Assembly: GCA_977020255.1 (NCBI GenBank)
Contig: CDROCS010003961.1
Coordinates: 186,001-250,000 of the forward strand
Direction of reading: 5' to 3'
Source of the DNA: Obrimoposthia wandeli
Lineage: Eukaryota
Length of the DNA stretch: 64,000 bases
Within the stretch, counting starts at the first letter, position 1. Each line of letters opens with the position of its first letter. Positions 24,334-63,974 of the stretch are shown one piece after another. Below the pieces are notes generated by a model. That model did no database searches. It was given only the letters and a program-made list of their open reading frames with translations, and was not told where the DNA came from. Both the position numbers and the translations under genes were made by a program.

Positions 24334-24822
24334 ATGCAGGAATATATCATAGATTTTGAGGCTTTCATTAACAAAAATGATGATTATATTATAAAATAAT
24401 TATTTATTATGGATGTATGCGACGTTTTTCATCCTTTGCATTTCATATTTCAAATAGATATCCCGTTTAAAAGTTTAGATTATAAGAAAAAATTTACTAA
24501 TTTATATCTAACTAATTACTTTCATTTATTAAAATGGAAAGAAGGACATAAGGCTTTTTGTGAAATATGTATTTTCGATACAATAACATCTAATTTTGAT
24601 ATAGAAAATGGAATTTTTCATGTTTTAGATGAAATGGATGGCAAAAAGTATAAGACTTTAAAAAAATATTTTCCCAAATTGAGGTTGAATACTTTAAATA
24701 TTTCACATGATCATCTATTAAAAATTCCACGAAATATTTGCTGTCCATATCGTAATCATGGTGACCATTGCGCATATAAAAAATGTTTAAGTCTTTCTTA
24801 TTATTACTTGACATGTAGATAA
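24334..24822 (+). pseudogene. Element gene C: DEDD/DnaQ-like exonuclease-fold candidate
   Basis: ATG at 24334 is in frame with ORF 24409. YIIDFEAF...YIIK*L has one TAA (24397) at the expected KEL position. Later HLLKWKEG and C-terminal CPYRNHGDHCAYKKC. Confidence 0.55.
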
Positions 24823-25052
24823 ACAATTCTTCTAATTGGAGAAATTCATTATTAAAATTTTACAACTAATTACAAATAAGCCTTTTGATTGGAAGAATAA
24901 AAATATTTTTTTCAACCAATAACAGATAAACAATCCTTCTCAGTGGAGTGATAAATTCAATTTTTTAATCCAATAGGAAAAGAGCATGTGTGTATAAATT
25001 TTAGTATATAAGCAAACACTTTCTTCATTTAAATCCCCGACTATTTGAAATA

Positions 25053-25723
25053 ATGACTATGGTAAGAATCTATACTTATTATTTCTTTATTAATATTTAT
25101 GATTTCAGATTACTTGTAACCTGTTTCCAGCATATTGTGGTGCTTCGGCTCTGCATGGAGGAGAGACCTACATGGAGATAATGTCCGCCTACTATCGGAC
25201 AACGTCTTGCGGGCTTCACTTCTTCGTCTGTCCCTTCTGCAGAACAATGGAGGAGAAGGAGTTTCGAGACTTCTTCGGTGAACATCGAGCTCATCTATTC
25301 TGTTTCACGGCCAACAACAAGAAGAGGGATATCGTGCAATTGGTGCGCGATTCGCAGGCCGCTCCAGCACCTGCTCCAATTCCAGTTGCAGTGATTCAAC
25401 CCGTTTACGGTCCTGCGATTGGTCCTTTTCTCCCGACTCCTGATTCTGCTGCACCATCCCCTCAAATGATTAACAATGAGTGGATGAATGACATCTCTAA
25501 GGAAGATTTTGAGGAGATGGCGCCAGCAACCCAATACTCAAACAATGACTGGATGGAAAATATCACCCAGTCAGATTTCGAGATGGAGCAGCCTCAGTGG
25601 AGCGATAACTCCTGGTTGGAGACCATCGAAGAATCCGATTTCGTCGAGATAACGGACGACAGCTTGATGGATTCCGTCAATGAAGAGGACTTCGTACCAG
25701 CTACAGTTGGATTGCCTTCATGA
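25053..25723 (+). CDS. Element gene D: 2-exon protein with a Cys/His-rich N-terminus, Pro-rich linker and four acidic W/F repeats
   Basis: ATGACTATG|gtaaga, 47-bp intron (25062-25108) ending ttcag|. Exon 2 is in frame with ORF 25172 and uninterrupted to 25723. Upstream CCAAT boxes and TATATAAG at about 25005. Confidence 0.7.
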
Positions 25724-25816
25724 GGTATTTTTTTATTATTATTTTTCAGATTCTTTTTTAAAATTGTAATTATATATATATTATTTTTAATTAAATATAT
25801 ATTATTGTAACTATAT

Positions 25817-27528
25817 TTGAACGAGTCTTTAAAAAATTTAACGGCATCTTTAAATGCATGGCCAATCACACAGTCAGTGTTCTCAGCTTCGGTTAACGAT
25901 AAGGGGATTTTTCCGTATAAAATTATAAAAACAGAAATCCCACCCATAACTGATTTTGAGGGTGTAAGTCTTCAAGACTATAATGAGGCCCGTACATTTT
26001 GGGCGAATAATTGTCGAAATCTTCTAGAATATATGCTTTATTATATGAAGTTAGACATTTATCTTTTAACTGATGTTTTTGAGTCCTTTCGTGTAAAATC
26101 TTTAGCAGAAGATGGGCTAGATCCCATGCATTTCTTTAGTTTACCTGGTCTTTCATGGGCAACAGCAATAAAAACTCTTAAAATTAATATTGAGTTACTG
26201 CAAGATCCCGCGATGTATCAAATGTATGATTATGGTATACGCGGTGGAATAACTTTTGTCAACCAACATCATGTTGTCAAAAATCAATCCACGGAGATTC
26301 TGTACATCGACATTAATAATTTGTATGGGTGGGCGCTTACTCAACCTCTACCTGATGCCAACTTTAAGTGGGTTTATGATGAGGAAGAGTTGAATAAGTT
26401 GATGACAGATTTGGCTACTGTTGATACAGTTTCATCAGATATTGGCTATTTCGTTGAGGTTGACTTATCAATCCCTCCCAATGTGGATGATAAATTAGAT
26501 GATCTCCCTGTAGCACCTGTTCATCAATGCCCACCTAATTCAAAGGTTAAGAAATTACTGTTAACACATGAAGACAAGTTGAATTATGTTGTGCATTGGC
26601 GGCTTCTTCAATTATACTTAAAGTTGGGAGCGAAAGTTACTCGAATTCATCGTGCTATAAGCTTCAGTCAAAACTTTGTGTTTAAAGACTATATTGAGAA
26701 GAATTCTAGAAAACGTAATTTGGACATTAGCAAATTCGATCGACCTTTTTACAAGTTAAAAGTATTAGTCTTTTTGGAAAAACGGTTGAGGACTTGCGGA
26801 AACGTATTTGTCTACGGTTTTGCAATGATGAGCGTAAACTAATAACATATACTAGCAATTACAACTTCAAGCGTAGTTTTACAATTGCAGATGACTTGGT
26901 AGCATTGTTATTAGGAAAACAGAGTATTTGTCTTGATCGATCGAGTTATATAGGTCAAACGGTTTTAGACATTTCTAAACTCAGATTGTACGAGCTTCAA
27001 TACATAGAATTAGAGAAATATCGACAAGAATTCAATTGTGAGATCAAAATCGCAGCTGGGGACACTGACTCTTTCTTTTTAGAATGTAGGAATGTTAGTT
27101 TAAATAATCAATGATTTCCGGCAATGTTTAGGGACAACTTACTAAATACCCATAAATATCCCGCTAACCATCCTCTACACTCTATGAGTTTAAAGGATAT
27201 TATCGGGAAATTTAAGGATGAAAGCGAGGGACAGGTTTCGTATGATGATTGTATTTTCCTATGCCCTAAATGCTACAGTTTACATGCATCTAATAATACA
27301 TGTTCAATGAGAGCAAAGGGTGTGGGAAGAAACAATCTTACACATGAGGCCTACCGGAAAGTTTATGATACTGGGTGTATTGAAAGCGTTGAGCAAACTA
27401 GATTTATTTCAAGAGCCCATCAACTGTATTCCCATAAATCAACCAAAATCGCTTTGAGTAGTAATGACGACAAGCGCTTTTGGGTAGAAAAGAACGCTAG
27501 CCTGGTTTATGGACACTTCCGAATTTAA
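25817..27528 (+). pseudogene. polB: Protein-primed family B DNA polymerase (pPolB), N-terminally truncated and frameshifted
   Basis: KGIFPY, YMKLDIYLLTDVFESFR, GLDP.HF.SLPGLSW, RGGITFV, YIDINNLYG (motif A), YKLK/SLFGKT across a shift near 26765 (motif B), AGDTDS (motif C), GKFKDE, RAKGV, ALSSNDDKR. Confidence 0.95.
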
Positions 27529-27790
27529 ACGGTTTTCATTTTTTGATTTTTTTTAGTTTAGTTTTTTAAAATTTTAGGTCTATATGGCACTTTGACTCTA
27601 ACTTTTTGTTATTTCAATATATCTTTTAGGATGGACCTTATCTTTGCTGACAGATCTCATTGTGATGTTGTGTTTATTAAATGTATTAAAAAATTCGTCT
27701 TATTTCTTTTATTATTTTACCCTTATATTTTTTATGGATTTAAAAAATAATTCAAAATAAAACATTAAAAATATTTATTTTTGTAACACA

Positions 27791-28120
27791 CTAATCATTT
27801 TGCAACGATAACCATAAAATACATAAATGTCCACAGTTTCTCGTCGCAGGATCCTGATATTGTATCTTGTTGTAAAATACTCTTCTTCGTCCTTTTTGAA
27901 TAGTTGAAACAAGTTTGTGTGGATAATACATTGTAAGTGGATCAAATACATGTATTGTCCACTCTCTAACATAAATAACTATCCAATGTTCTCCTGGTAA
28001 ATTCGAAGTATGAGTATTGATAATGTAACCTCCAGATTGAAAAAATGGAATCATATCAATAGGATAAACTCCATTGAATTTATCACCCAAAACCTTCTTT
28101 GCTGATTCTTGTACTTGTAC
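27791..28120 (-). CDS. Adenovirus-like (adenain, C5/Ulp1-type) cysteine protease, 5' end damaged
   Basis: F.GVYPID, IINTH...GEHW, FDP and QYQ.....CG.LC give the His-Asp-Gln-Cys catalytic set. No start codon is retained. Confidence 0.9.
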   Translation of the reverse strand, partial: VQVQESAKKVLGDKFNGVYPIDMIPFFQSGGYIINTHTSNLPGEHWIVIYVREWTIHVFDPLTMYYPHKLVSTIQKGRRRVFYNKIQYQDPATRNCGHLCILWLSLQND

Positions 28121-28122
28121 TT

Positions 28123-28269
28123 AAACAAATTATTAAAGTTCGATTCCTTGTTAGCTTCCTGATACAAATCATCAATTATTATTACATCTTCGTTTTTCAA
28201 TCTTTCACACCAATTTGCATCAAATCTTTCAATAAATTGTATTCCCTATTCCACATCAAAGACAATTAT
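28123..28269 (-). pseudogene. Packaging ATPase (A32/FtsK-like) stump, Walker B region only
   Basis: Translation ...LKNEDVIIIDDLYQEANKESNFNNLF matches the Polinton ATPase hhhhDDL..EA......LF motif. No Walker A. Abuts the protease. Confidence 0.65.
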
Positions 28270-28274
28270 CAACA

Positions 28275-28637
28275 ATGGACGATAACCAACGGGTATTAAA
28301 CGATGAGGAAGATATAGAAATGTTCGAAGAATCGGATAAGGATATGTATGAAGAAGTGAAACAATATTTCAAATACAAAGTCAGATTCTTGAAGAAGGCT
28401 CAACTGAGTGCTTTAGTAAATCCTGTGACAATTGAAAGAAGAAAGTTCAGCTACTATCTATCAAATATTCAAAAACCAGATTTTCAATATCTTAAAGAGA
28501 AAGTTGAAAAGGCAGTTCCGAATTTCACTTTCAATAAGAACGTATTTTATATCCGAGGAGCCGATGAAGCATTTCTAGATGACTATGGAAGATATGTTGA
28601 TTTGATTCGTTTCCGAAAAAGAAGCAATGGACTCTAA
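28275..28637 (+). CDS. Element gene E: unknown 120-aa protein with an acidic N-terminus
   Basis: Intact ATG-to-stop ORF inside the TSD-bounded element. No recognised motif. Confidence 0.6.
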   Translation: MDDNQRVLNDEEDIEMFEESDKDMYEEVKQYFKYKVRFLKKAQLSALVNPVTIERRKFSYYLSNIQKPDFQYLKEKVEKAVPNFTFNKNVFYIRGADEAFLDDYGRYVDLIRFRKRSNGL

Positions 28638-28860
28638 CAATTCGACTTTATGGTTACAAGAAAGATGAAATGGGAACAAAGTTGCCTATGTGGAAAATTG
28701 AACGTGCTCATATTTCAATGTTTTAACTTTTGCGTGTAATAAATTGTAATCGGTTTTACTATGTTTCCTTCATTTAATAATCAGTTTTATTTTTTAAATA
28801 TTTGTATCTTATATGTATTTTGTATAAACATTGTTTTTTAATCAGTTTCCTTATTTTAGA

Positions 28861-29271
28861 ATGGATTCTCTTCTGAGATGTGTAGGAAATTTTTATTATC
28901 CAGAAAGAATTTCAAAAGAAAAACTATGTAATATATTAAAGAAGCATCAAATTATACGAATTATGAATCCTGTGAAAATATCAAAAGTGGAGAATAAATA
29001 TCTCATCGAAATTTTAACAACATCTGATATTGATCAATTGAAAAATATTTTGGGATTTTACATTCCTGATTATGTATATGAAGGAAATTGTTTCCAGCTT
29101 GAAACTGATCCCAGTCTGGATTTTAAAAATTATCTAGGATATTTGATTGCTCCAATTCTAGATGAAGAACTATGGAATATCTCAATACGTCTCAATGGAT
29201 ATTTTGCTGATGATGGGAAAATGCAGCCTCTCTGGACTTTGAGTGAAGCCAATATGTTGTTTTATGTTTAA
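28861..29271 (+). CDS. Element gene F: unknown 136-aa TIR-proximal protein (OB-fold SSB candidate)
   Basis: Intact ORF with ATG right after ttattttag. Two further decayed homologues in this window, each beside a TIR. Confidence 0.7.
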   Translation: MDSLLRCVGNFYYPERISKEKLCNILKKHQIIRIMNPVKISKVENKYLIEILTTSDIDQLKNILGFYIPDYVYEGNCFQLETDPSLDFKNYLGYLIAPILDEELWNISIRLNGYFADDGKMQPLWTLSEANMLFYV

Positions 29272-30899
29272 TAAATATTTTGAAAAATAATTTTGACTCG
29301 TATTTTGTTTTTTCTCCTCTAAATTATATAGATTTAATTTTTCTCTCTGACCTAAATATTTAACATGTAGTAATCTAAAATCTATCATAAAAATAGTAGT
29401 AATATATTTGAAATTTCGTCTGTGATAAGCCGCCGGGGTTAATATGGATTCCAGTGGTCTTCTCTAACCACTTTTGAGATTCGCTGTAAAATTTTTAAAA
29501 ATTATGGGGGAGGGTGAATGGAGACATACATACACGAAATTTCACTCCACACACCTACAAGAAATTTCACTCCACGCACATGCTCGGTTTTAAAGGACAT
29601 TGGGGGACCCCCTTCCTTCCCCCTTTGGGTAGAATGGAGACACACATACACGAAATTTCACTCCACACACCTGCACGGTTTTAAAGGACAGTGGGCGGAG
29701 GGGGTGTGTATTAGACCGAACACATCCACCTACTATCATAAATTAAAGTTAAATTAAATTAACACTTTAATTTAGTTTTCTTTAATAAATAAATGGATTT
29801 CAAATATAATTATATATTTATTTACCATAGGAAAAAATAAGCACCTTAAAAGCTTTTTAAATAATTTACAATTTTGTACCTTAAATATATATATAATTAT
29901 AGCTTGATAGCAATTCTTCAAAATTCAGAACCTTTTTGAAATACAAATTTTCAACCATGGTTTTTTATCATATAATATACCACAATTTTTTTAAATTAAG
30001 TATACATACATATTAACTACCATAATTTAAAATTCAAACAAATTAATCCTATTTATCGTCTCTTTTAAAATTGTCATTTTGCAGATCTGTGCTGTTATTT
30101 GAATAGTGAGACAAACAATTTATAAACATATTATTGTACATTCTATTATAAAAACTCTTAATTCAAAATGTTTAAAATCATAATAACGATAAAAAAACCA
30201 CATCTTTATAATTTATTTACCGAGTTATCCGGACTTATTCTTAGTTTATAGTTTATTCTAGATCTGTTTTAGATCCCTTTCATATGTTGGACTATGCGAA
30301 TAAACTATCAGGAACCAAAATTATTGCAAAATGTTTCTTATATAATATTTAGTAACTTGTATACATTTATTTTCGTTGTCATTAATGTATACAAATGAAT
30401 TCCTCTAATATAAATAAAGATAAACATTTCAAAAGTCCGACATATAGATTTTACTGTTCGGATAGTTAAGATATTTATAATTGTAATTTAAACAGAAAAA
30501 ATACAATTATTTACATGACATGATTATTTTAAAAAATATATTCAGAAACATAAAATTGACTTTTTGGTATTTCTATAAACATTTCCTATATTTTATTGAA
30601 CATTATCTGGTTTAGGAAAACTTTAAATTCTGAATATAATTGAAAATGGTAAATTATTTTCTCAAACTTTAAATGGATAGGATGGGTGGCTTTTTTCATT
30701 GAAGTTGCACGATTTAATAATTATGCCCAGTGAGTAAACATAACTGGCAATGTTCGATGAACAAACGTGTCTATTCAGAAATGTTTCTATTGTTAGTATT
30801 TGATTAGTATTATGAATATTTGACAGAATTCTACTTCTTATAAATTATAAAAGCATAATCATCGTTCAGAAATTCTTAGTTTGGTTATTGGAGATTTAC

Positions 30900-31217: not shown

Positions 31218-32399
31218 GTCTACATTATGACACTTTAGAAAAAAATTCTAATTTGGATATTAAAAAGTTCGATTTTTAATCATTTTTAATCATTTTATGT
31301 TTATATTTATGGATTTTAGAATACATTTTATCGTGTATATTTCAGAATAATGTAAATTAAGATGCAAAGTTGAATCTTAGATCATTTATAAGGATTTTAC
31401 TGTGTAATTTTTTCTGAATAATGTAAATTTCGAATTAGAAAGATCGATTTTCACTCAATTTATAGATTAGAAGATACATTTACCAAGGATTTTTAGAATA
31501 ATGCAAATTATAATGCAAATAATTGATCATTTTTCAATGAATTTACCCATATTTCTATAAATTTTCTTTGATTTTAGTTTAAGGACAAAATTACTTTCAG
31601 AAGAAATAAGTTGTATTTCCTGACGATTCTTATGTGCCAGCGCGTCAATAAAGTTTTCATGGTTTTTTATATGATAGATGCACTAATTGGATTTCTCTTC
31701 AACATATTTAAAGGATTCCTCCGTGTAATAAAGATATAATTTGAAGAGAGTATATAATGATCAATAAGTGAGAGTTTATTACGGATAATTAGAGAGATTA
31801 CTTTGATCAATTAGTCAATTTACGATCAAGAGTATATTATTAATCTGCATCTTTAACTAAGAATTTTATTAAATTTCAAAATGAATCATTAAATCTAAAA
31901 TGTTCTCTACTTTCTTTTAAACAAGTTTTTTTGTAAAAGAATCTGTAAAAGTTTTGTTACTAAAAATGATTAGTTTCAAAGAATATTGTTTGAAGATTAG
32001 CTTATTTAAGGAAATTAATCTATGTAATAAATAATTAATTTAATTATCACTAGTAAACATCGGATATCAATACTATATTGGAACATTTTGTTTAGAAATT
32101 ATTACATCAGGACTAGAAATGGATTAAATTATATTCTCTCTTTCGATTCATTTAAACCTAAAATTATTTTCAAGTATCATTTATTGATATAATTTATTCA
32201 ATAATGTTTAGAGTATGTATTTATCTCAGTCATAATTTATTCATATTACTTGAGTCTATTGATAACTATATTCTCAAAAAATAATTTTTCATTGATCGAT
32301 ATATCAAACAAGAAAATTCTTACAAAACTCTACAAGCTTATTGATGTTATCAATATTATGGAAACTTATTTTCAAACATCAACAACTAGTCGATTTATT

Positions 32400-33540
32400 A
32401 CTTCAAATAAATCGGTTTAGTAAAGAAATTATACATAAAAGGTTCTATAAGATAAATAAAGAAGATGCATGAGATTTGTTACATTTAGATGAGATATGAC
32501 ATGGGTGTTTATAAGGTTTAAGAATAGAAAATAATGGATAGAGTTTTAGAAGAGAAACTCACGATTTGTTCAAAAGGTTCTCTAGAAAAGTAATTAATAC
32601 ATAGAAAGATAAGTAGCGGTTCAGAGGAGAAATTAACGATACTTTTAGGAGGTCTCAAAAATATAGTCTAGATTGGATTATGAAGTGAAATTGATGTGAT
32701 TTATTTAAGAGATTTAGGAATGGAATTTAGGAAGTTTATTACATAGAAGAGGAAATTTACGAGGTATTTAGAAGGTTATAGAAGAAATATTAATGCATAG
32801 AATGGTTATAAAAGACAAATTGAAAAAGTGTTTAAGAGGTTTCAGAAGATATATTATAGATTTGAAGGGTTTAGAAAAGATTTAGCAGGAATGTTTAGGA
32901 GGTATCAGAAAATATAGCCTTAAAAGGTGCTTAGAGAAGTATTTAAAAGGAGTATTTAGGAAGTTTCAAAAAAAAAGAAATTAAATTTGGTTCATAGGGG
33001 AAATTAAAGGGTTCCAAGAGAATTTAACCGAGGAGTTCAGAAGAGAAAATATAACCTTAAAGGAGATAAAAGGAGGATTTAACGGATATTTTAAGAGGTT
33101 TCAGAAGAGGAAATATAACTTAAATTGGTTCAGAGAAGAATTTATATGGGGAGGTTTCAGAAGAAATTAAAGGAATTTAGAGGGAGATTTAACAGGGAGT
33201 TCAAGAGGTTTCAGAAGAAGAAATTAGATGAATTTAGAGGGAAATTTAACGGTGAGTTCAGGAGGTTTCAGAAGAAATTAGATGAATTTAGAGGGAAATT
33301 TAACGATGATGTTTAGATGGTTCAGATTAAAGCTTTGAAGGGTTTAGAAAAGATTTTTGCATGGATGTTTAGGAGGTTTTGATAAATATAGCCTAGATAG
33401 CTAGATTGAATGAAAATAAAAGCGATGTATATAAGATTAGTAGGATTCAGAAGAAAAAATATAGGATATATTTTACTTTGAAAGGAAATTTAATGTGAGT
33501 TAGAAGATATTTAGGTGGTTTAGAAGGGAAATAAGACTAC
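32400..33540 (+). repeat. Purine-skewed, decayed 54-57-bp satellite
   Basis: Best units at 33151 (54 bp), 33205 (57 bp) and 33262 (54 bp): GAGGTTTCAGAAGAA(GAA)ATTAGATGAATTTAGAGGGAAATTTAACG. Related decayed copies flank them. Confidence 0.75.
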
Positions 33541-35529
33541 TGTTCTAAAACTGTAGTGAAATCGTATTTTATCAAAATTCCGGTCATTTAAGATTATGAT
33601 ATAAGCGATCATATTGAATTTCAGCTTTATACTGCTTCAAAGCGAGTTATACCAAAAATTAATCATAAGTATTTTACTCATATTTCGGTCATAACGAAGA
33701 CAATTTTTACAAAAGCAGAGATATTATTCAAACTTTTACCATCTTCTTGTAAATTTTTCGCATATATTTTGGAAAATGATGTTAGAATTAGAATATTAGA
33801 ATTAGAGTATTAGAAGTTAGAGGTTAGATATTGAGTAATAACGATTAGTGGGCATATTCCCAATTATTGATTTTATAGTTGAAAATATTCAATGATGTTG
33901 TAAATAGCTACTTATAAGTCAATAGGTATTAAGGAAAACTTAAAGAAACAACTTCTGAGTATTGATAAAGTCATCATATTTTTATAAAAAATCGGGTGAA
34001 ATCTTTATGATTACTATTAATAGTTTTGGTTCATATAAATGGATTCTATCTTCATTAAAAAATACTTTAAATCAATTAATATTAAGACATTGAATGAAAA
34101 TTAACGATTTCATTAATACATAGTAAATAAGTTATTTTCAAAGAGAGTTTTATCGAAGTCATCAATATTATCGTTCCAAAGCCAATATTTAAGCATTTTA
34201 TCTATTCCTTCTACATTCCTTCAATTAAAATCAAAGCTAGGTATGCTATTTTTTTAAAGATAATGTTTGAAGTATTTTATTGAAATTTAGATGCAATAAT
34301 GAAGAATAGTGTTAAAGAATTGATATATGTGAGGAAATTATGAATTATACCTGGTTTGTTTGACATATTGAACATATATAATCAACCTCTTGTTTGATAT
34401 TAAAAAAATAGGGTTGATAATAGAGGTTTATGGGAAGGAAAGTTATTGAGAATTATAGGAAAATTTATAATTATGTTCTAAAAGTTGGACTTGTGATGAA
34501 GAAATTATACCCGGAATGTTATATATGAGAAGAGATAGTAATTAAAACGTATGCAATATTCAAGAATATAAATGATTAATTACTATTTATATATGTTTCA
34601 AAAGGAAAATTTCTAAGAGTATTAGTGAGAATGAATCAAATAGTTACAGAGACATATCTATCCATTACTTATCAATTTCATCCATCGTTTCAATTTCATG
34701 GATCATCTGATCAATAACTTCAAACATAACAGAGAAATCTCTGGAAGATGCTTCGTGATCATAAATAGTCTTAAGCCAAGATCTCAAAGAAAGTTATACC
34801 GAAATTATATAGATTTAACTAATATCCAAAGACTACTTCTAAAGTCAATATTCAAGCATCTTATCTACATTCATTTCATCAGCCAGCCTTGAATCATCAT
34901 TGATATTTATAATGTAGCATTTCATGAAGCAATGCAAAGTAGAAGAAGATATTACGAAATATTTAGGAGATTTCAGAAGAGAAAATATACCCTAAAAAAA
35001 GTTGAGGAATTAATCAGATATTGTGATGTATGACGGAATATTAAGAAAGTTTTAGAAGCGAAATGGGTTATTTTCTTTTCAAGCAACTCTAAAAGGACTG
35101 CATACAAATCATCACGATAATAACATGTATTGCATGACGAAATCTTTACATAACCTCATATATTATTGATTATTTTCAAAGATAGTTATACTGAAATGAT
35201 CAATAATGTATGTATTGTATCAATATTATGCACAAACCTGATGAAAACACCTCAAGTCAAAGAATCTTATATCAAATTTACAATCATAACAGGTATTGAA
35301 AGATGATTTTATATCACATGTAATTGATAATTTTCTTAAGAAACTGATACCAAAAGTAATAATATTGCATATAATTCATCAATATTATAACAGTTATGGT
35401 AAGCTTTAAAGTTCTATATAAAACCTTGAAAGACATATGATGATTATTGAAAGTTGTACTTAAATTATCAATATTTTACTATTATTTCAATATAGTAAGT
35501 CATATTCAAGTTTTTCATATTTGTCAGTC

Positions 35530-41600: not shown

Positions 41601-43518
41601 TGGCGGTGCAGCGACGATGAGCTCGGCGGGGATGAATGCTGAACTGGTCCAGTCACTGTGTGTGTTATGGTGAAGGACACCAACCAATTATTTTGTGTTT
41701 AGCGTACGCGAGGCGATGCTCAACCATGGAAGCATTGACTTGTGCTATAAATAGCATGTGTGAGCCAATTTTGGATCGAAAATTTAATAGTTTTGATTGT
41801 TTTCGGTTCAATGAAGTTATTGCAGCATCAATATTCTTAATTTAATGTTTTTACTTTACATCGAATTAGATTTTGAATTACAGCTATTAACGAAAACTTA
41901 ATTGTTAGCACTGGTGTATTAAAATTGGTGATTCGACTGACTGAAACAGTTTTGGGCGTATAAGTCACTGCGTGTGACAATAGCCATAATATATCGAATA
42001 ATACTCCATTATCTAATAAATCGCGGATTTGATTTTCAATAACGCTTTCTGTTTTCCGTTATTCTTCAAAATATTTTTAAACAACAAAGTCATCAGTTGC
42101 TTGAATTTTTCACCATTCTTACAGTTTCTTATATTCATCGGCAGATTTCTGTAAATATTCGAAGCATAAATTTAAAATCTTCCATAACTCTGTTTAATAT
42201 GTGAGACTTTCTTAACTAATCGGCAGTGATTATCGTTGTTCCTAATATGTATGTACCTGCTCGCTGCACCACCACAAGTCTAAGCTCTCTGTCTAATTTG
42301 AGGATATAACTTGATGGAATTTCTACCAGCAGCAGCTGTTGGTGAAAATGGTGTTCTTTCTCTTTTCAAGGTATTTAAAATTTGTTTTGACAATCGATAA
42401 AGGTAAAAACCTTTTTCACCAAAATTTACTTTTTCAAACGCATGCCATTTCCAAAGAAAGAAAACTTTCCCCATTAAGCAAACATGAAACTTGATTATCC
42501 CTATCCATATGATGAAACTCTGACAGCTGTGAATTTACGTAAACTTTAAATTCATTGGAATGACTTCTTTTTATATATTTACTATCTATATTTGTATCTG
42601 TGAGTAACACATATAAACAATATTTTGTTCTGTTTTATTTAATTTTAGGCATGAGGTTTGACATTGTTAAAACATGTAGACGAATTGGGTCAACTTGGCA
42701 ATACTGATATCAAGGCAACATTTGTATACAACAATTTTCCACATAGATAATGGATAAAAAATTAAATGTATCAACCTTCATTACATAAGAATGTATCGAA
42801 ATTATTTCCAAATTTGATTTCTTTCAATAAAGATTTAATCGTCCATAATTTTATTTATTACTTAGATTCGTGTTCTCTTTACTTTTTCGGCAAAGACAAA
42901 TATATATTGATCTAATTTTGATGATTTAGTACATTGTAGAAACAGTTGTTAAAGGTTAAATGACAAATAAATGTGCAGTTAGTTTGAAAAAGTTTAACTT
43001 GAAATAAATTTAGTGCAAATAACTTAATTAAATAATTATTCGATGACACTAACTATGAAAATGGTAAGTTTTTTTTACCGCTATTTATATAAAAATAAAA
43101 ATGTCATCATCTACTTGATTTTGAGATAATCTCTACTGTTGCAATATAAATTGCATTTAAAAATAAGATAGAGCAAAAACTGTGGAAGTACATTTTGTTT
43201 AAATATATGACCGTACTTCCGCAGTTTCGGTTTCATAATAAATAAATACCAATATGGTAAAAATAATGCAATTTAAAATTCACAATAACAAAAGTTCAAT
43301 TCAATTGATTATTTATTTTAAGTTTCGTTTTCGATATCATTTTGTAAAACGTGTATTTAGATAAATATCTGACAAAAGTTGAATTCAATTGATTATTTAT
43401 TTCAAGTTTTGGTTTCGGTACTAATTTGTAAAACTTGATAGACAGCAGCGAGGTTATGAAAAGAGAATATGGTGATAGCTCAACGATAAACGGATATGGT
43501 TGGCAAGATACTGGTGGA

Positions 43519-44067
43519 AAAGTCGCTGAATATAATCTATCAACAAAAGTAGTAGATGTCATGATCAATGTTCCTAATGCTGCTACTGATAGCGAACGTC
43601 AAGTGGTTATATGTGCTGCACAAAGTGCGAATCTCCACTGTATAAAACTTATCAATGATACAACTGTATCTGCAGTTGCATATGGTCTCTACTGTCCGGA
43701 TTTCCCAGAACCTAAACAAAAACCGAGAAAAGTAGCATTTATTGACATGGGATACTCAAAATTGCAAGCAAATATTGTTGCTTTTAACAAAGGTAAAATG
43801 AGAGTAGTTGCAAGTCCGTGTGCAGATATGGGTGGAAAAGACTTTGAACGTGTTATTATTGATCATGCGAAGATCAACTTTGAGAGCACTTTCAAGTTGG
43901 ATGTAATTGATGGAAAGAAACCTTCTATTCGTCTCACCCAGGAATGTGAAAAACTTGAAAAATTGATGAGTGCAAATTCCACTGAGATCCAAATGAATAT
44001 TGAATGTTTCATAAATTATGTTGATGTTCATATGCGAATGAAGCGAAATTATTTCGAGAATCTTTAA
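43519..44067 (+). pseudogene. HSP110: Intronless HSP110/HSPA4-type nucleotide-binding-domain fragment inside the LTR element
   Basis: VVDVMINVP...TDSERQ, LINDTT..AVAYGLY, KPRKVAFIDMGYS, AFNKGK, RLTQECEKLEKLMSAN and MNIECF are HSP110-specific rather than canonical HSP70. Open for 183 codons within ORF 43435-44067. Confidence 0.93.
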
Positions 44068-44089
44068 ACTTCTCTAAACTAAGTGATAA

Positions 44090-47000
44090 TGGAAAGAAAG
44101 TCGATATGTTAATATGATCAGATTTCATTGAAATGCATAGGAATATTGAAAAACGATGGAGAGGATCTAAAGATCCAATAGCATGAATGACATCATTAGG
44201 GTGGACAGTGTATGTCGAGCAAATTTAGAAAGGACATACAAAAAACAAACTTTATCAGAAGTTATTTGGGTAACACAGAATTAGACAGTCAGCTACATCG
44301 ATTTCGGGAAGTTGAAAACCTTTGTGACGATACAAAAATAATGAAAAAGACGGATAAGCTGAGTTACGAGAATAGCATAAAGGCGATGGTAATGGAAGAA
44401 GGAAGATATGAAGTGAAGATTCCATGGAAAGATGGGATTATGGAACTTCAAATGGCAATGAAAAGATTGCTGAGTTTGTAAAGAAGGTTAAATGAAGATA
44501 ATGAATTATCAGAAGATTACTCAAAGATAATTGATGATCAAGTAGAAAAAGGGTACATGAGACCACTTAAGAAAGAAGAGACGAAGGAGACGCGAAAGGT
44601 ATTTTCTGCATTTTCCAGTGATAAATCGGGATCAAAAAACTACTAAAGTAAGAATAGTTTTCGATGCCGCCGCAATAGATTGCGGGAAGTATTTAAATGA
44701 TTTCATTGATAGCGGGCCAAAGCTACAGGGAGACGTGAAGGAAATACTTCTCAGATTTCGAGAAACAAGAATTGCATTGGCTTGTGATATCACGAAAATG
44801 TATTTATAAGTAAAGGTAGATCGTTCGTATCGAAAATGGTTACGTTTCTTATGGAACGACAAAGAAGGAAATGTATTGACCTATGCATATGAACGGATAG
44901 TGTTCGGGTTAAATGTATCGCCATTTCTGGCACAAATGGTATCAAGGGAAAATGCAGAAAGATACAAGGAGAAGTATCCAGATAGTGCGAGATTGATCTT
45001 GGGAAATACCTATATGGATCATACATTGTGCTCTGTAGATACAGAAGATCTAGCTAAGAATACAATGTCTGAAGGGAAAGAAATATGGAAAGGAGCGAAA
45101 AGGGAAGCCAAAACTGGAAACTAATAGTGAAGAAATCAACAAGGATATCCCATTATCAGATCAAGCAAAGGTATTAAAGATAGAAGATGAAGAACGTCAA
45201 GTTAAGACATTAAGAATTCAGTGGGATTCTCAAGAAAATTATTTCACTTTTAAAACCAAAGTGTATTATGGGATCAATATTAGTAAGCGAGAATTCCTAA
45301 GTATTTTGTCAACAGTATCTGACCCTTTGGGGTTCGTGAGTCCATTTATTGTGAAAGCGAAGATATTAATGCAAAAAGTATGGTTAAAAGGATAAGTTTG
45401 GGATGAAAAGATAGAAGGATATTTAAAGTAAGATATAATGATGTGGCTTTCACAATGTAAAGAACTATACCAAGTCACTATATCGAGATAGGTCAAAATA
45501 GAACCGGATAAAGAGAGAGATATTCACGTCTTCGTAGATGCTTCATCAGAAGATTATGGATCTGTTACATATCTAAGGGCAAGGAAAAAGGGAAAGTAAA
45601 AGTTGTATTAATAACAGCGAAATCGAAAGTAGCACTGTTGAAAACAGTGAGTATTCCGAGATTGGAATTGATGGTCCCATGTGAAGGGATTAAATTAGCA
45701 AAGGTTATAGCGAGATCGTGGAATGAAGAATGTAAGAAGGTGATATTCTTGTCAGATACTGAAGATATGTTGTGGTGGATAAAACAACAAGGTAGAAATT
45801 ATAAACCTTTTGTTGCAAATAGAATTGGAAAGATCCTTGAAACAACGGATATAAATCAATGGAGACATCTACCAACAAAAGAAAACCCAGCGGATATTTT
45901 ATCGCGAAGGGTAGTGTAATTGAATGTATCTCTATCAGGAAGTGGTGGGAAGGACAAGAATATTTAAAGAAAACAAAAGAGATGTGGCCGATAAATAATA
46001 AATTTGAAATATTCGAGGATGCGGAGAAGAAAGTATTACTTTATTGACATACGAGGTGAAATCCGTACATGAAAAAATACTAGAAGTTGAAAAGTATTCT
46101 AGTTTGACAAGAATAAAAATAATAGGAACTTGGATGGATCGATTTATTGATAATTGTAGAAAGAAAAAAGAAGTGCGGATAAAAGGAGAATTAACCGTTG
46201 AAGAAATGAAACTCAGTATGAGTAACCTGATCAAAGAATATCAAAGGAAATATTTTCAGATATAAATAAAAAGTTTAGTGAAGACTGGGGAAGTCTTAAA
46301 AAATAGCAAAATCTCAAAGCTAAGACCATTTATAGATGAAGGAGGGTTTTAAGAATAAAATCCAGATTAATTCATGCTGAATTCTTAAATTATGATAGTA
46401 AGTTATCAGTGATATTGTCAGGTGAAGGATGGCTAGCAAGGTTAGTAGTGAAAGATTTACATGATATACATTTTCACTACGCCAGCATCCAGCATATATT
46501 AAGTCTACTACTGAGAATATTTTGCATTTTAAAGTCTCGACGATTAATTAGAAAAATTGAAATGGAATGTGTGATTTGCAAAAGAGCAAAAGGAGCCCAT
46601 ATAAAAATATGATGGCACCATTACCGAAGTTCAGATTGGAAGAACCACTCAGGGCGTTTGTAAGAGTCAGTGTGGATTTTGCAGAACCTTTTTTGACAAA
46701 GTAAGGTCGGAGACAAGTAAGAGTAAAAATATATGTTTGTCTATTTACTTGTCTACAGAATCGAGCGTTTCATTTGTAGATGGCATATGGTTTGGACACC
46801 GATGCATTCGTCAGAGCATTTAAAAGGTTCATGGGAAGAAAAGGAAGGCTAACATTAATGTTGTCGGATAACGGTTTGAATTTTGTGGGAACAGCAAATC
46901 TGATAGAAGAAGTTAAGTTCGATACTTAGCACGATACGTATAAAGCAGAGTTAGTAAAGAATAATATTAGATGGGTTTTCAATCCGCCAGGTAGTCCTCA

Positions 47001-47532
47001 CTTTGGTGGTGTATTTGAGATAATGGTTAAATCGGTAAAAAAGGGCGATGAAAAGAGTGATGGAGAGTGCAGAATTGTCGAATGAAGAATTGGATACGAT
47101 GTTAATTGAAGTCGAGAGTCTTGTAAATTCTAATCCATTTAGTTATGTGAGTCAAGATAATAAGGAAATTACTTCATTGACGCCAAATAATATTTTGATA
47201 CCCGAAGGTATAGTAAATTGCGAATTTTGCTGCAAATAATGTAAAATCGGTGGAAGTTGTTACAAGGTCTGATGGAGCAATTATGGAAAATATGGATGGC
47301 GGATATCGTGACGATGTGGGCAGTTAGAAAGAAGTGGTGGGAAACGAAAGAACCATTAAAAGTAGACGATGTCGTGCTGGTATTGGAGAGAAAAATTGAG
47401 CGAGGAAATTAGCCATTGGCGAGAATACTAGAATTAATAAAGGGACAAAATGGATTGGTACGGGTAGTAAAATGGATGGTGGGGGAAAAGGAGAAGAAAA
47501 AGTTTGTGAGAAATTTATGTAGAGTATTGTGA
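44090..47532 (+). pseudogene. pol: BEL/Pao pol: protease tail, RT, RNase H, integrase and C-terminal domain, heavily disabled
   Basis: VDMLI*SD...SLGW, TTKVRIVFDA, LNDFIDSGPKL, DITKMY, FGL..SPF, YMD, PRLEL, WRHLPTKENPADI.SR, DFAEPF, SDNG, FNPPGSPHFGG.FE, W/PLARI.E...G.NG.VRVV. Many stops and frameshifts. Confidence 0.93.
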
Positions 47533-49079
47533 GAGAAAGAGTTCTTGTTTTGTGCTGCTTTGTTTTTTTGTTCAATATAAATTACATTTTAAAATAAGAT
47601 AGAGCAAAAACTGCGGTAGTACATTTTGTTTAAATATATTACCGTACTTCTGTAGTTTCGGTTTCGGTTTCATAATAAACAAATACTGATATGGTATAAA
47701 TAATGCAATTTAAAATTCACAATAACAGAAGTTCAATTCAATTGATTGTTTATTTCAAGTTTTGGTTTCGGTACTATTTTGAAAAACATCTACTTTATGC
47801 TCCATTATGACTTCATTTATGTAAATATATTTTATTGCATTTACAGAAAATATAAATATACACAGAATACAGCTCAGTATATGTTTAAAGATTCCTCGGT
47901 GTAAACATTACTATTAATTCTCGAATTAAAAAAGTGATAAAAACATGTAACATTCATATCAAAAAGATTTATCTACAAAGAAATGACTTAGTTATTGAGA
48001 TTACTGCAATGCTACATGCGATTATAAAATCAAGACTTAATTTTCAAAATTATATACTTTTAGTATTTTAGCTTATCAATTAAATTGCTTGCAAAACAAT
48101 TTAAACAAAGCCTTTGGAATGTTATTTTAAATAATGAAAAGTACTAGTAAGTAGTGTAAAGTGTCCATTTTAAAGTAGGTGTACAGACCTCTTTGTACAC
48201 AATCGAAAACAGATCGCACGCAAGTGGGGAGTAAATGTTCTTTATGTACAACAAACTATAATAGATCGTTCTGGCTCGAGGTATTTGCTCATATTTTGGA
48301 ATATACACTTTACACGACTAATGGGGTTTCTGCTCGGGAGAAACCCATTTTCAGACAATTTTATATTAGACGTTAAAAATTGAATTAATGTTCTAAATGT
48401 TTTTCCACCATTCCTCATAAATACTTCACCTACACTTTCATCTTTGAATTTTTAGATGGAATCTTTAAAAAGATCATTGTATAATTCATAAGTTAGTCTG
48501 ATAATTGCAAGTTTCCGACAACTCATTTGAAATAAGTTCTTTTTGATAAAAAAACGGTCTTGTAAACTTTCTTACATTCCAGGAAAAAACCCACTATTCA
48601 TTGTCTTTTCTTCATTGTTTTTATATGAATTTAAAAGCTGATGTAAGTTGACTGCACCAGTATAATTGTATTTGTCATTGCGATAAAGCATTAGAGAATT
48701 AGCTACGTGTTCATTTTAACTCAATTTGGTATGATTAATAAGGATTTTTAGACACTGTTTAAGCACATGAATGCACGTGTTTGAGTTATTTTGAAAAACA
48801 ATTATTAACATTTATTAGGTCTTATAGTCTTATCAGTATATATTAAGTCTTTGAGATATTGGGCATTTTGTTCCAGTCTTTGTTTGTTACACCCGAAATC
48901 ATTGTCTTACAAAACTGTTTTCACAAACAAATTTCATCAGTGTTACAAACATATTCAAAATATAATGATTTCACTAGTAATTCAAGTGCTTTTATGTATT
49001 ATGCACCGCAAAATTTGTCATATTTTAAGTGCATACCATACAAAACTCAATTCACTATAGCTTTCAATCTTATTATATA

Positions 49080-58637: not shown

Positions 58638-58845
58638 CTTATGACATAACATTGATATGACACAGCTTCGGTATGACACAACGTCGATATGATACAGCCT
58701 CGATATGATACAACCTCCATATGATACAACATCGATATAATATAACATCGATATGACACAATCTCCATATGACACAATCTCCATATGATACAAAGTCGAT
58801 ATGATACAGCCTCGATATGATATACTCTCGATATAAGACAGCCTC
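58638..58845. repeat. 16-bp minisatellite (about 13 copies, GATATGATACAGCCTC consensus)
   Basis: Visible tandem units. Lies about 25 bp into the intron after the 58870 exon donor. Confidence 0.9.
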
Positions 58846-62793: not shown

Positions 62794-63974
62794 TAAGGTT
62801 ATGCAACTTTTTTCTCCTTTCTAAAATCGTCTTAGAAAGCTTATGATACAACTTATTTAATTTTTTTGGCTTCCTAACCAATTTATTTACGCAACTTACT
62901 TATCAAGAATTTTTAAATGCCTCATCAAAATAGCAAAAATATGCGAAGGACCATCCTAAAGAATTTATTGTAACATCAAAAGGAGATTTTTTTGTCAGTT
63001 ATGTAACCAAATCATCACGTATTCATTGGCCGTCTTGACACACTAGAAAATAAACATATTTATTGAAATTTACACCGCTAAATGAAAATTGCAACCAATT
63101 TACAATTATCCACGCTGTTGATGATGTTGTAATGCAAATAAAATCGAATAGATTTAACTTTGTTCTTCTATTAACCGACGCTGCTCGTTACATGACATCA
63201 GCTGGTTTGGCACTTAAGCACATTTATCCAAAGTTATTCCATGTATCTTGCATTGCTCATTTGCTTCACAATTGTGCTGAAAAGGTCCGAGCATTTTTCT
63301 CAAGGGTTGATGAAATTATTGCCAGAGTTAAAGCGGCCACTGTGAAATGCGGGCGTCGACGAGAAGAGTTTTCTTCCATATGTTATCATCCACAACCTAT
63401 TCCCACTCGCTGGGTATCTTGGCTAGAAGCTTCATTTTACTATTCCGATAATTTGCCCTTTGTTAGGGAAGTTGTAGGCCGCTGAAAAGGTGATGAACTC
63501 ATAATCAGCCATGCGATTTCATCTGTCAATGCAGCGAACCTTCCTCGCGATCTGCTTCATATTAAAATATGTTATGAATGTTTGGCAAAATTAGTGGTCA
63601 AATGCAAGTCAACTACTTACAGCATTCGGGAAGCTTGGGTTGATCCATTCTTTAAACTTTGATGAAGACCCTTGCAATATTCGAAAATATGTAAATTCTC
63701 GGATCATCAAGAATAGCGGATTCAACGATATAATGACGATGAATCGAGGTGAGATTTCACCGTCATCGTACGAGCTTCTGCAGTCCTGTCAACCAACATC
63801 TGCATCGGTGGAACGGAGTTTTTTTTTTCAATGTCATCAAATGACCACAAATGTTTGTTCCATCAAATGTGTAAAAATACCTAATTTTTTTACATAATAA
63901 GAAATATAAATGTTTTGTTGTTGTTCTGAAAGCGATTAATCTGAAAATATTGAATTTTGTAAGCATAGTACTTA
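62794..63974 (+). mobile_element. hAT-superfamily transposon remnant (CGGBP1-like Zn finger plus RNase H-like core); boundaries tentative
   Basis: AKDHPKEF...FCQLCNQ, LLTDAARYM, YPKLFHVSCIAHLLHN, P.PIPTRWVSWLEA..YY, PTSASVERSF. Internal deletion and frameshifts. Weak TIR-like ends. Confidence 0.8.

What the first reader, a model, noticed from the sequence alone, without database searches (positions are those of the whole stretch)
43137..47788. BEL/Pao retrotransposon that swapped its gag for a piece of host HSP110
Seen in sequence: within one LTR-to-LTR unit with a perfect TCTAC TSD, the gag and most of the protease region are replaced by an intronless 183-codon HSP110 NBD fragment. It lies in the element's sense orientation, about 80 bp after a duplicated LTR tail. 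That frame is fully open, whereas pol is full of stops and frameshifts and the LTRs differ by about 10%. Established knowledge: LTR elements capture mRNA by template switching during reverse transcription, HSP110 is the nucleotide exchange factor of HSP70, and closteroviruses encode their own HSP70 homologue. Inference: a transduced chaperone fragment, possibly amplified as a non-autonomous family or retained under selection.
Basis: partly seen in the sequence, partly recalled or inferred. Interest (0 to 1): 0.75.

Follow-up and report, generated by a model that had tools for sequence, protein, structure and literature searches.

The report
Dead retrotransposon carrying an HSP110 gene fragment
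An old, broken BEL/Pao retrotransposon has an intronless piece of a cellular HSP110 chaperone gene where its gag gene should be; this kind of LTR-mediated gene capture is already documented in animals, so the case is real but ordinary.

Summary
Two about 220-nt LTRs (21 mismatches in 214 aligned bases, 2 indels) with TG..CA ends and a perfect TCTAC duplication bound a 4,652-nt unit. Its internal part carries BEL/Pao pol signatures in the canonical order on the + strand, spread over all three frames and needing at least 23 breaks. No gag or protease signal was found. In their place lies a 210-codon open frame. Codons 29-210 are a colinear, intronless match to residues about 127-313 of HSP110 (human HSP105 nucleotide-binding domain, E 7.6e-47; HSP70 only about 1e-17). 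The piece has no poly(A) and no duplication of its own, and it is truncated at both ends. That fits capture of an mRNA by template switching during reverse transcription, a class described in animals, BEL/Pao elements included (PMC5131818).

The fragment has lost conserved HSP110 residues beyond what almost any real HSP110 has. It covers under half of one domain. Its open frame is only mildly unusual under neutral decay (P about 0.03-0.15). Neither the parental gene nor any other copy could be found, because the source genome appears to be absent from the searchable collections. Verdict: a new member of a known kind, of low interest.

The parts
43132..43136 (.). 5' target-site duplication, TCTAC
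   Evidence: Read directly; identical to 47789-47793.
43137..43351 (+). 5' LTR (starts TGT)
   Evidence: Aligns to 47569-47788: 21 mismatches in 214 positions, 2 indels.
43352..43371 (+). About 20-nt filler between the 5' LTR and the extra LTR tail. No recognisable primer-binding site.
   Evidence: No convincing similarity to the LTR or to the sequence after the second tail.
43372..43434 (+). Extra partial copy of the last 63 nt of the LTR
   Evidence: 92% identical to the 3' LTR tail and 87% to the 5' LTR tail.
43435..43518 (+). 84 nt of unknown origin, in frame with the HSP110 piece and containing the first ATG of the frame. Candidate element leader or another captured scrap.
   Evidence: No HSP110 homology above shuffled controls. 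Part of the 210-codon ORF.
43519..44076 (+). Processed HSP110 fragment: nucleotide-binding domain residues about 127-313, sense orientation. Open up to the stop codon that ends the ORF at 44065-44067.
   Evidence: Pfam HSP70 3.3e-38. PDB HSP105 NBD 6gfa 7.6e-47, Sse1 5e-33, HSP70s about 1e-17. HSP110 profile 1.5e-72. Best relative anywhere is 57% identical.
44077..44875 (+). Unassigned internal sequence, where the end of protease and the N-terminal part of RT would be expected. No family match.
   Evidence: Pfam and PDB searches of its open pieces found nothing.
44876..47529 (+). BEL/Pao pol remnant, given as one broken gene. Order RT, Peptidase_A17 region, integrase zinc-binding domain, DUF5641. 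At least 16 breaks (stops or frame changes) in this span. The integrase catalytic core was not detected.
   Evidence: Pfam; count of breaks.
47569..47788 (+). 3' LTR (ends ACA)
47789..47793 (.). 3' target-site duplication, TCTAC

Best explanation
This is a chimeric retrocopy made by LTR-mediated retroposition.

Inferred origin: a spliced HSP110 mRNA was co-packaged with the RNA of a BEL/Pao element. During minus-strand DNA synthesis the reverse transcriptase left the element's RNA upstream of RT, copied about 560 nt from the middle of the HSP110 coding sequence, and returned to the element's RNA in the leader close to the 5' LTR. That dropped gag and at least most of protease. The 20-nt filler and the extra 63-nt LTR tail are taken as scars of further switches near the 5' end.

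Shown: the product has both LTRs, so it was integrated by an integrase, presumably supplied in trans, and made the TCTAC duplication.

Later history (inferred from counts): the copy has sat long enough for its LTRs to diverge by about 10%, and it has decayed. Pol is broken at least 23 times, and the HSP110 piece has lost conserved residues. Its frame is still open most likely by chance, or because pol was already damaged when the capture happened. The fragment covers under half of the nucleotide-binding domain and has no substrate-binding domain, so it cannot act as an HSP110. Today it is a dead non-autonomous element with no evident function.
For: - LTR pair, TG..CA ends and perfect 5-bp TSD around one unit.
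- BEL/Pao-specific Pfam families in canonical order on the same strand as the HSP piece.
- The HSP piece is of the HSP110 type, colinear and uninterrupted. In Elysia, Adineta and Macrostomum HSP110 genes the same residues are split by introns, with shared boundaries near residues 176/177 and 222-225.
- No poly(A) run. The longest repeat between the two junction zones is 7 nt, which 59% of shuffles reach.
- The piece is truncated at both the 5' and the 3' end of the coding sequence, and element sequence is replaced rather than interrupted. These are the hallmarks listed for LTR-mediated retrocopies in flies, mosquito (BEL18_AG), fish, chicken and mouse, together with filler of 2-26 bp at junctions (PMC5131818).
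- Decay: the ORF keeps 9/12 and 36/49 highly conserved HSP110 columns, below the 5th percentile of 61 real HSP110s. Its median identity to them (38%) is lower than that of 60 of the 61.
- The neutral simulation leaves the frame open in 3-7% of runs, and in up to about 15% with a lower indel rate.
Against: - Pol needs at least 6 breaks per kb while the 546-630-nt HSP frame has none (Poisson P 0.015-0.04). This is nominally more intact than a common neutral history predicts.
- Microsimilarity at the junctions, the direct signature of template switching, cannot be examined without the parental mRNA and an intact relative of the element.
- The extra LTR tail and the lack of a recognisable primer-binding site are not predicted by the simplest two-switch model.
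- Copy number in the genome is unknown.
Confidence: 0.75

Rival explanations
1. Read-through transduction, as in classical retroviral oncogene capture. An ancestor element sat inside or just upstream of the HSP110 gene. A transcript running out of an LTR into the gene was spliced and packaged, and one further switch joined it to pol. The partial LTR tail followed by 84 nt of non-HSP sequence would be the old LTR-host boundary with a scrap of intron or flank.
For: A 63-nt LTR end lies 84 nt upstream of the HSP110 homology, and those 84 nt match neither HSP110 coding sequence nor the rest of the element.
Against: The LTR copy is only a tail, preceded by a complete 5' LTR and filler rather than by pol. 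The HSP piece starts in the middle of the coding sequence and is spliced. Nothing in the window shows an HSP110 gene nearby: tblastn finds no other hit below E 0.1.
Confidence: 0.1
2. The chimera is or was a successful non-autonomous family, or a co-opted gene. On this reading the HSP110 frame is kept open by selection, for example as a fragment that binds HSP70 or as a source of small RNAs against the parent.
For: The frame has 0 breaks while pol has at least 23 (P about 0.03). It is in sense orientation as the first long ORF after the LTR and has an ATG. Some LTR-mediated retrocopies show KA/KS of 0.15-0.26, and Bs1 of maize became a gene (PMC5131818; PMC13317346).
Against: Conserved HSP110 positions are lost beyond almost all real members. 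The phosphate-1 loop, subdomain IB, the second half of IIA and the whole substrate-binding domain are absent, so the piece is not an independent folding unit (inference from the known Hsp70 NBD architecture). No similar short protein was found among 5.8 billion clusters, and the best hit among 1.84 billion representatives is 56% identical. That absence is weak evidence, because the genome itself seems to be missing from those collections. The significance is post hoc.
Confidence: 0.08
3. Later, independent insertion of an HSP110 retrocopy (LINE-mediated, or cDNA captured during break repair) into an already integrated element, with deletion of gag.
For: The 5' region is complex, with filler and a duplicated LTR tail, as seen at repaired breaks.
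Against: No poly(A) and no TSD above chance. The mRNA's 3' end is missing, whereas LINE-made copies keep it. Element sequence is replaced, not split.
Confidence: 0.05
4. Assembly artefact: the junctions are mis-joins in a repeat-rich region.
For: The window is dense in repeats: a DNA_pol_B_2 ORF of the Maverick/Polinton kind, a hAT-like ORF and tandem arrays. No reads are available.
Against: The unit is coherent: matching LTRs, a perfect TSD, a continuous frame running from the 84-nt leader into the HSP110 piece, and no N runs in the window.
Confidence: 0.03

Closest known systems
LTR-mediated retrocopies of animals (Tan et al. 2016, PMC5131818), e.g. CG4799_CG11924_r in the Pao element BATUMI of Drosophila and ENSANGG00000011308 in BEL18_AG of Anopheles
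   Same: A partial, intronless piece of a host mRNA replaces internal element sequence between two LTRs. It is truncated at both ends, has no poly(A) or own TSD, is in sense orientation and in frame, and shows filler at a junction. BEL/Pao hosts are among the described cases.
   Different: This copy is much older (LTRs about 10% apart, against under 1% for the fly cases). Its parent gene and junction microsimilarities could not be examined. It has an extra partial LTR tail. The captured gene is HSP110.
Bs1 of maize (Jin and Bennetzen 1994; Elrouby and Bureau 2001, 2010; as summarised in PMC13317346)
   Same: An LTR element without its own full coding set that carries transduced fragments of host genes in an open frame.
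   Different: Bs1 is a plant element with three captured genes, and it is expressed and treated as a new gene. Here there is one fragment, no expression data, and signs of relaxed constraint.
Acutely transforming retroviruses with gag-onc fusions (textbook knowledge, not tested here)
   Same: A host coding sequence replaces part of gag-pol, and the element is replication-defective and dependent on a helper.
   Different: Those carry functional, selected host domains. Here there is a non-functional sub-domain fragment in a retrotransposon, with no sign of any gag remnant.
Closterovirus HSP70h
   Same: A mobile or viral genome that holds an Hsp70-superfamily sequence.
   Different: HSP70h is a complete, conserved, essential protein of an RNA virus family. 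This is 183 codons of an HSP110 NBD in a single decayed copy. The analogy does not extend to mechanism or function.

Membership tests
BEL/Pao LTR retrotransposons (Belpaoviridae) | Two LTRs with TG..CA ends flanked by a short target-site duplication | tested here: met
   about 215/220-nt LTRs, TGT...ACA ends, 5-bp TCTAC on both sides.
BEL/Pao LTR retrotransposons (Belpaoviridae) | Pol with BEL/Pao-specific domains in the order PR-RT-RH-IN | tested here: met
   Peptidase_A17 (34.8 bits, cut-off 22.3) and DUF5641 (32.6 bits, cut-off 23.1) are above threshold. RVT_1 and Integrase_H2C2 are below threshold but in the expected order. The protease and the integrase core were not detected.
BEL/Pao LTR retrotransposons (Belpaoviridae) | gag gene between the 5' LTR and pol | tested here: not met
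   No gag-like family in any open piece. The space is occupied by the HSP110 fragment. The copy is therefore a defective derivative, not an autonomous member.
BEL/Pao LTR retrotransposons (Belpaoviridae) | Primer-binding site next to the 5' LTR and polypurine tract next to the 3' LTR | tested here: inconclusive
   No TGG-initiated tRNA-complementary stretch directly after either LTR end. Purine-rich runs lie 28-65 nt upstream of the 3' LTR. Decay, and the lack of this host's tRNA set, prevent a decision.
LTR-mediated (template-switch) retrocopies | Intronless host sequence replacing, not interrupting, internal element sequence, with both LTRs kept | tested here: met
   colinear across intron positions found in three relatives; gag and protease missing.
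LTR-mediated (template-switch) retrocopies | No poly(A), no own TSD, truncation at both ends of the mRNA | tested here: met
   residues 127-313 of a protein of about 850 residues.
LTR-mediated (template-switch) retrocopies | Microsimilarity between mRNA and element at the switch points | not testable with these tools
   Needs the parental mRNA and an intact relative of the element from the same genome. Neither was obtainable.
HSP110 (HSPA4/HSPH1/Sse1) chaperones | Closer to HSP110 than to canonical HSP70 | tested here: met
   HSP105 7.6e-47 and Sse1 5e-33, against HSP70s of about 1e-17 or weaker. The named best hits are HSPA4, HSPA4L and HSP105.
HSP110 (HSPA4/HSPH1/Sse1) chaperones | Complete nucleotide-binding domain plus substrate-binding domain and C-terminal extension | tested here: not met
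   Only profile positions 127-313 of 811 are present. No further homology in any frame of the element. It is a fragment derived from the family, not a member in function.
HSP110 (HSPA4/HSPH1/Sse1) chaperones | Family-conserved residues retained | tested here: not met
   9/12 and 36/49 conserved columns kept, below the 5th percentile of real members.

The most novel reading that the evidence does not exclude
The chimera founded a non-autonomous BEL/Pao lineage that spread with an HSP110 sub-domain in place of Gag. Its frame is kept open because the product, or small RNAs from it, interacts with the host HSP70/HSP110 system. That would be a retrotransposon using a stolen chaperone piece.
Probability: 0.05. 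Interest if true: 0.6.

Novelty: new member of a known kind. Interest (0 to 1): 0.22.

Why it matters
It adds one more clean example, in an unidentified AT-rich animal genome, of how LTR retrotransposons pick up pieces of host mRNAs. This route to retrocopies and exon shuffling is already documented from yeast to mammals. It would matter more only if the source genome held many copies with the same junctions, or if the frame proved to be constrained or expressed. The evidence available here points the other way.

Tried and rejected
- Extending the HSP110 homology. By eye the frame after the stop and the 29 codons before the match seemed to resemble HSP110. Sub-profiles of residues 306-420 and 60-130 scored below shuffled controls, so both were dropped.
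- Finding the parent or other copies. The word search with the 210-aa ORF found no hit in its length range. Two exact look-ups of window ORFs were not on record. The full HMMER scan gave a best hit of 56%. The profile word search gave nothing closer than 57%. The metagenome scan with the protein found none.
- Naming the host. The closest relatives of the window's DNA_pol_B_2 ORF are unnamed metagenome proteins at 55% identity or less. The best HSP110 relative, P0001, comes from a GC-rich organism (GC3 0.62, against 0.27 here), so it is not a close relative of the host.
- Other families. The open pieces at 44212-44478 and 44618-44806 were tested against Pfam and the PDB as a possible second captured gene or a protease. 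Nothing was found.
- A simple 84-nt tandem duplication as the origin of the extra LTR tail. The 21 nt that follow each tail copy are not alike.
- A 7-nt repeat (43519 and 44097) as a TSD. It is at chance level.
- No tRNA and no Rfam family in the window.
Full report
**What is there.** The stretch 43137-47788 is one LTR-bounded unit.
- The two LTRs (43137-43351 and 47569-47788) align at E 1e-74. They differ by 21 mismatches in 214 aligned positions (K2P 0.107) and two indel events.
- The LTRs begin TGT and the 3' LTR ends ACA. The pentamer TCTAC lies directly outside both ends.
- No other copy of the LTR, the internal region or the HSP piece occurs in the 64-kb window.

**The element.** Short open pieces on the + strand match four Pfam families, in this order:
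- RVT_1 (weak).
- Peptidase_A17, 'Pao retrotransposon peptidase' (34.8 bits, above the curated cut-off).
- Integrase_H2C2 (weak).
- DUF5641 (32.6 bits, above the cut-off).

This is the BEL/Pao arrangement. The pieces lie in all three frames, and the longest + ORF in 3.5 kb is 93 codons. A dynamic-programming count gives the fewest stops read through or frame changes needed to cross a region. It gives at least 23 breaks for 44077-47540 and at least 16 for the Pfam-supported span 44876-47529. Shuffled sequence needs about 53. No gag, protease or integrase-core signature was detected. By instruction I give counts only, not places.

**The captured piece.** The frame 43435-44067 is open for 210 codons and is the longest ORF in the 34 kb around it.
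- Residues 30-210 match Pfam HSP70 (3.3e-38, profile positions 124-301).
- Among solved structures the best match is the human HSP105 nucleotide-binding domain (6gfa, 7.6e-47, residues 128-309, one 1-residue gap). Yeast Sse1 follows (5e-33) and canonical HSP70s score only about 1e-17.
- A profile of 62 diverse HSP110s places the homology at 43519-44076, profile positions 127-313 of 811.
- No other part of HSP110 is present in any frame of the element or elsewhere in the window.
- The 84 nt between the extra LTR tail and the homology, which include the first ATG, match nothing.

The piece is therefore a sub-domain fragment: the second half of subdomain IA, the first half of IIA, and IIB. It lacks the N-terminal phosphate loop, subdomain IB, the rest of IIA and the entire substrate-binding part. 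That assignment is an inference from the known Hsp70/Hsp110 domain plan.

**Processed origin.** I mapped three named HSP110 proteins onto their own genes: Elysia chlorotica, Macrostomum lignano and Adineta steineri. The residues corresponding to the fragment are split by two or three or more introns. Boundaries near residues 176/177 and 222-225 are shared by the mollusc and the rotifer. The window's copy runs through these points without interruption. It has no A-run of 6 or more downstream. The longest direct repeat between its two junction zones is 7 nt, which 59% of shuffles reach. It also lacks the 3' two-thirds of the coding sequence, which a LINE-made retrocopy would keep.

**How it arose.** The features match 'LTR-mediated retroposition' point by point (Tan et al. 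2016, PMC5131818):
- A partial host mRNA with both ends truncated.
- Element ORF sequence replaced rather than interrupted.
- Both LTRs present.
- No poly(A) and no own TSD.
- Short filler at junctions.
- Sense orientation with an in-frame longest ORF.

That paper includes BEL/Pao cases: BATUMI in Drosophila and BEL18_AG in Anopheles. The plant precedent is Bs1 of maize (PMC13317346). My mechanism is a set of template switches of the reverse transcriptase between co-packaged element RNA and HSP110 mRNA, followed by integration in trans. It is an inference from this anatomy. The direct signature, microsimilarity at the switch points, could not be read without the parent mRNA and an intact relative. 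The 20-nt filler and the extra 63-nt LTR tail (92% to the 3' LTR tail, 87% to the 5' one) show that the 5' end underwent more than one event. A read-through (oncogene-type) origin remains a minor rival.

**Is the frame kept by selection?** Three tests were possible.
1. Conservation. Among 61 HSP110 representatives covering the stretch, the fragment keeps 9 of 12 columns that are at least 95% conserved (real minimum 0.83, median 1.00). It keeps 36 of 49 columns that are at least 80% conserved (real 5th percentile 0.80, median 0.90). Its median identity to the family, 38%, is lower than that of 60 of the 61. The excess loss of about 0.17-0.19 of conserved residues corresponds to about 0.09 substitutions per site if all changes were neutral. 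That is at least the 0.05 per lineage implied by the LTRs.
2. Simulation. Mutating the frame at those rates, with the LTR-derived indel rate, leaves it open in 3-7% of runs. No-stop alone is 30-49%. With half that indel rate, which rests on only two events, the open fraction is about 15%.
3. Comparison with pol. At pol's break density, 3.6-4.2 breaks would be expected in the frame, giving Poisson P 0.015-0.04.

The openness is therefore mildly unusual, but it was the reason the region was picked. It is equally explained if pol was already damaged when the capture occurred. In the published set, 7 of 21 older LTR-mediated retrocopies also carry no disabling mutation. I conclude relaxed constraint and see no evidence for retention.

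**What could not be done.**
- The parental gene was not found. The best relative in 1.84 billion representatives is 56-57% identical (P0001, an unnamed 2.9-kb JGI contig with GC3 0.62, so not a close relative of this AT-rich host).
- The window's own ORFs are not on record.
- The closest relatives of its DNA_pol_B_2 ORF are unnamed metagenome proteins at 55% or less.
- The source genome therefore appears to be absent from the collections. The lack of further copies says nothing about copy number. The host stays unidentified: an AT-rich (about 30% GC), repeat-rich animal genome.

**A point to declare.** One search scanned metagenome contigs for a motif shared by the two LTRs, in order to find other copies. 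It returned nothing. I made no further attempt to fetch BEL/Pao relatives. In particular, I fetched no intact Pol comparator, and that step is listed under referred steps. Scripts treated each frame separately, with X at stops, and printed counts and outer bounds. One search printed raw three-frame translations of the two junction zones for reading, as the translate tool would.

**Verdict.** The capture interpretation is supported. The selection, amplification and closterovirus-like readings are unsupported. The finding is a new member of a known kind and of low interest unless the source genome shows a family of such copies.

Noticed in passing
window 24400-29300 (+), e.g. ORF 25817-26842: A cluster of + strand ORFs of 120-341 aa. 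One matches DNA_pol_B_2 (protein-primed polymerase B, 1e-14), as in Maverick/Polinton elements. Its closest relatives are unnamed metagenome proteins at 55% or less, followed by insect and coral proteins.
   Followed up: partly
window 63063-63485 (+): A 140-aa ORF with a sub-threshold DUF659 match (30.7 bits, cut-off 34.7), a domain typical of hAT-type transposases.
   Followed up: no
window 32000-34000; 33150-33326: A strong GC skew (+0.395 over 2 kb) with a 54-57-nt tandem repeat of about 3 copies. The retrotransposon interior (44-48 kb) shows a similar purine-rich skew.
   Followed up: no
window 58654-58845: A 16-nt tandem repeat of 12 copies at 80% matches. It overlaps a spurious-looking 114-aa minus-strand ORF.
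   Followed up: no
window 43513-43535 and 44089-44111: The start of the HSP110 homology and a stretch about 20 nt past its end share a loose GGAAA..AAGTCG..ATAT..TAAT pattern. The exact part is 7 nt and at chance level. It could still be a trace of junction microsimilarity.
   Followed up: partly
P0001 / L001 (JGI sample 3300021258): In the captured stretch, the nearest relative of this unnamed full-length HSP110 among 61 representatives is the window's fragment (56%). The two may come from the same poorly sampled animal lineage despite very different GC content.
   Followed up: partly
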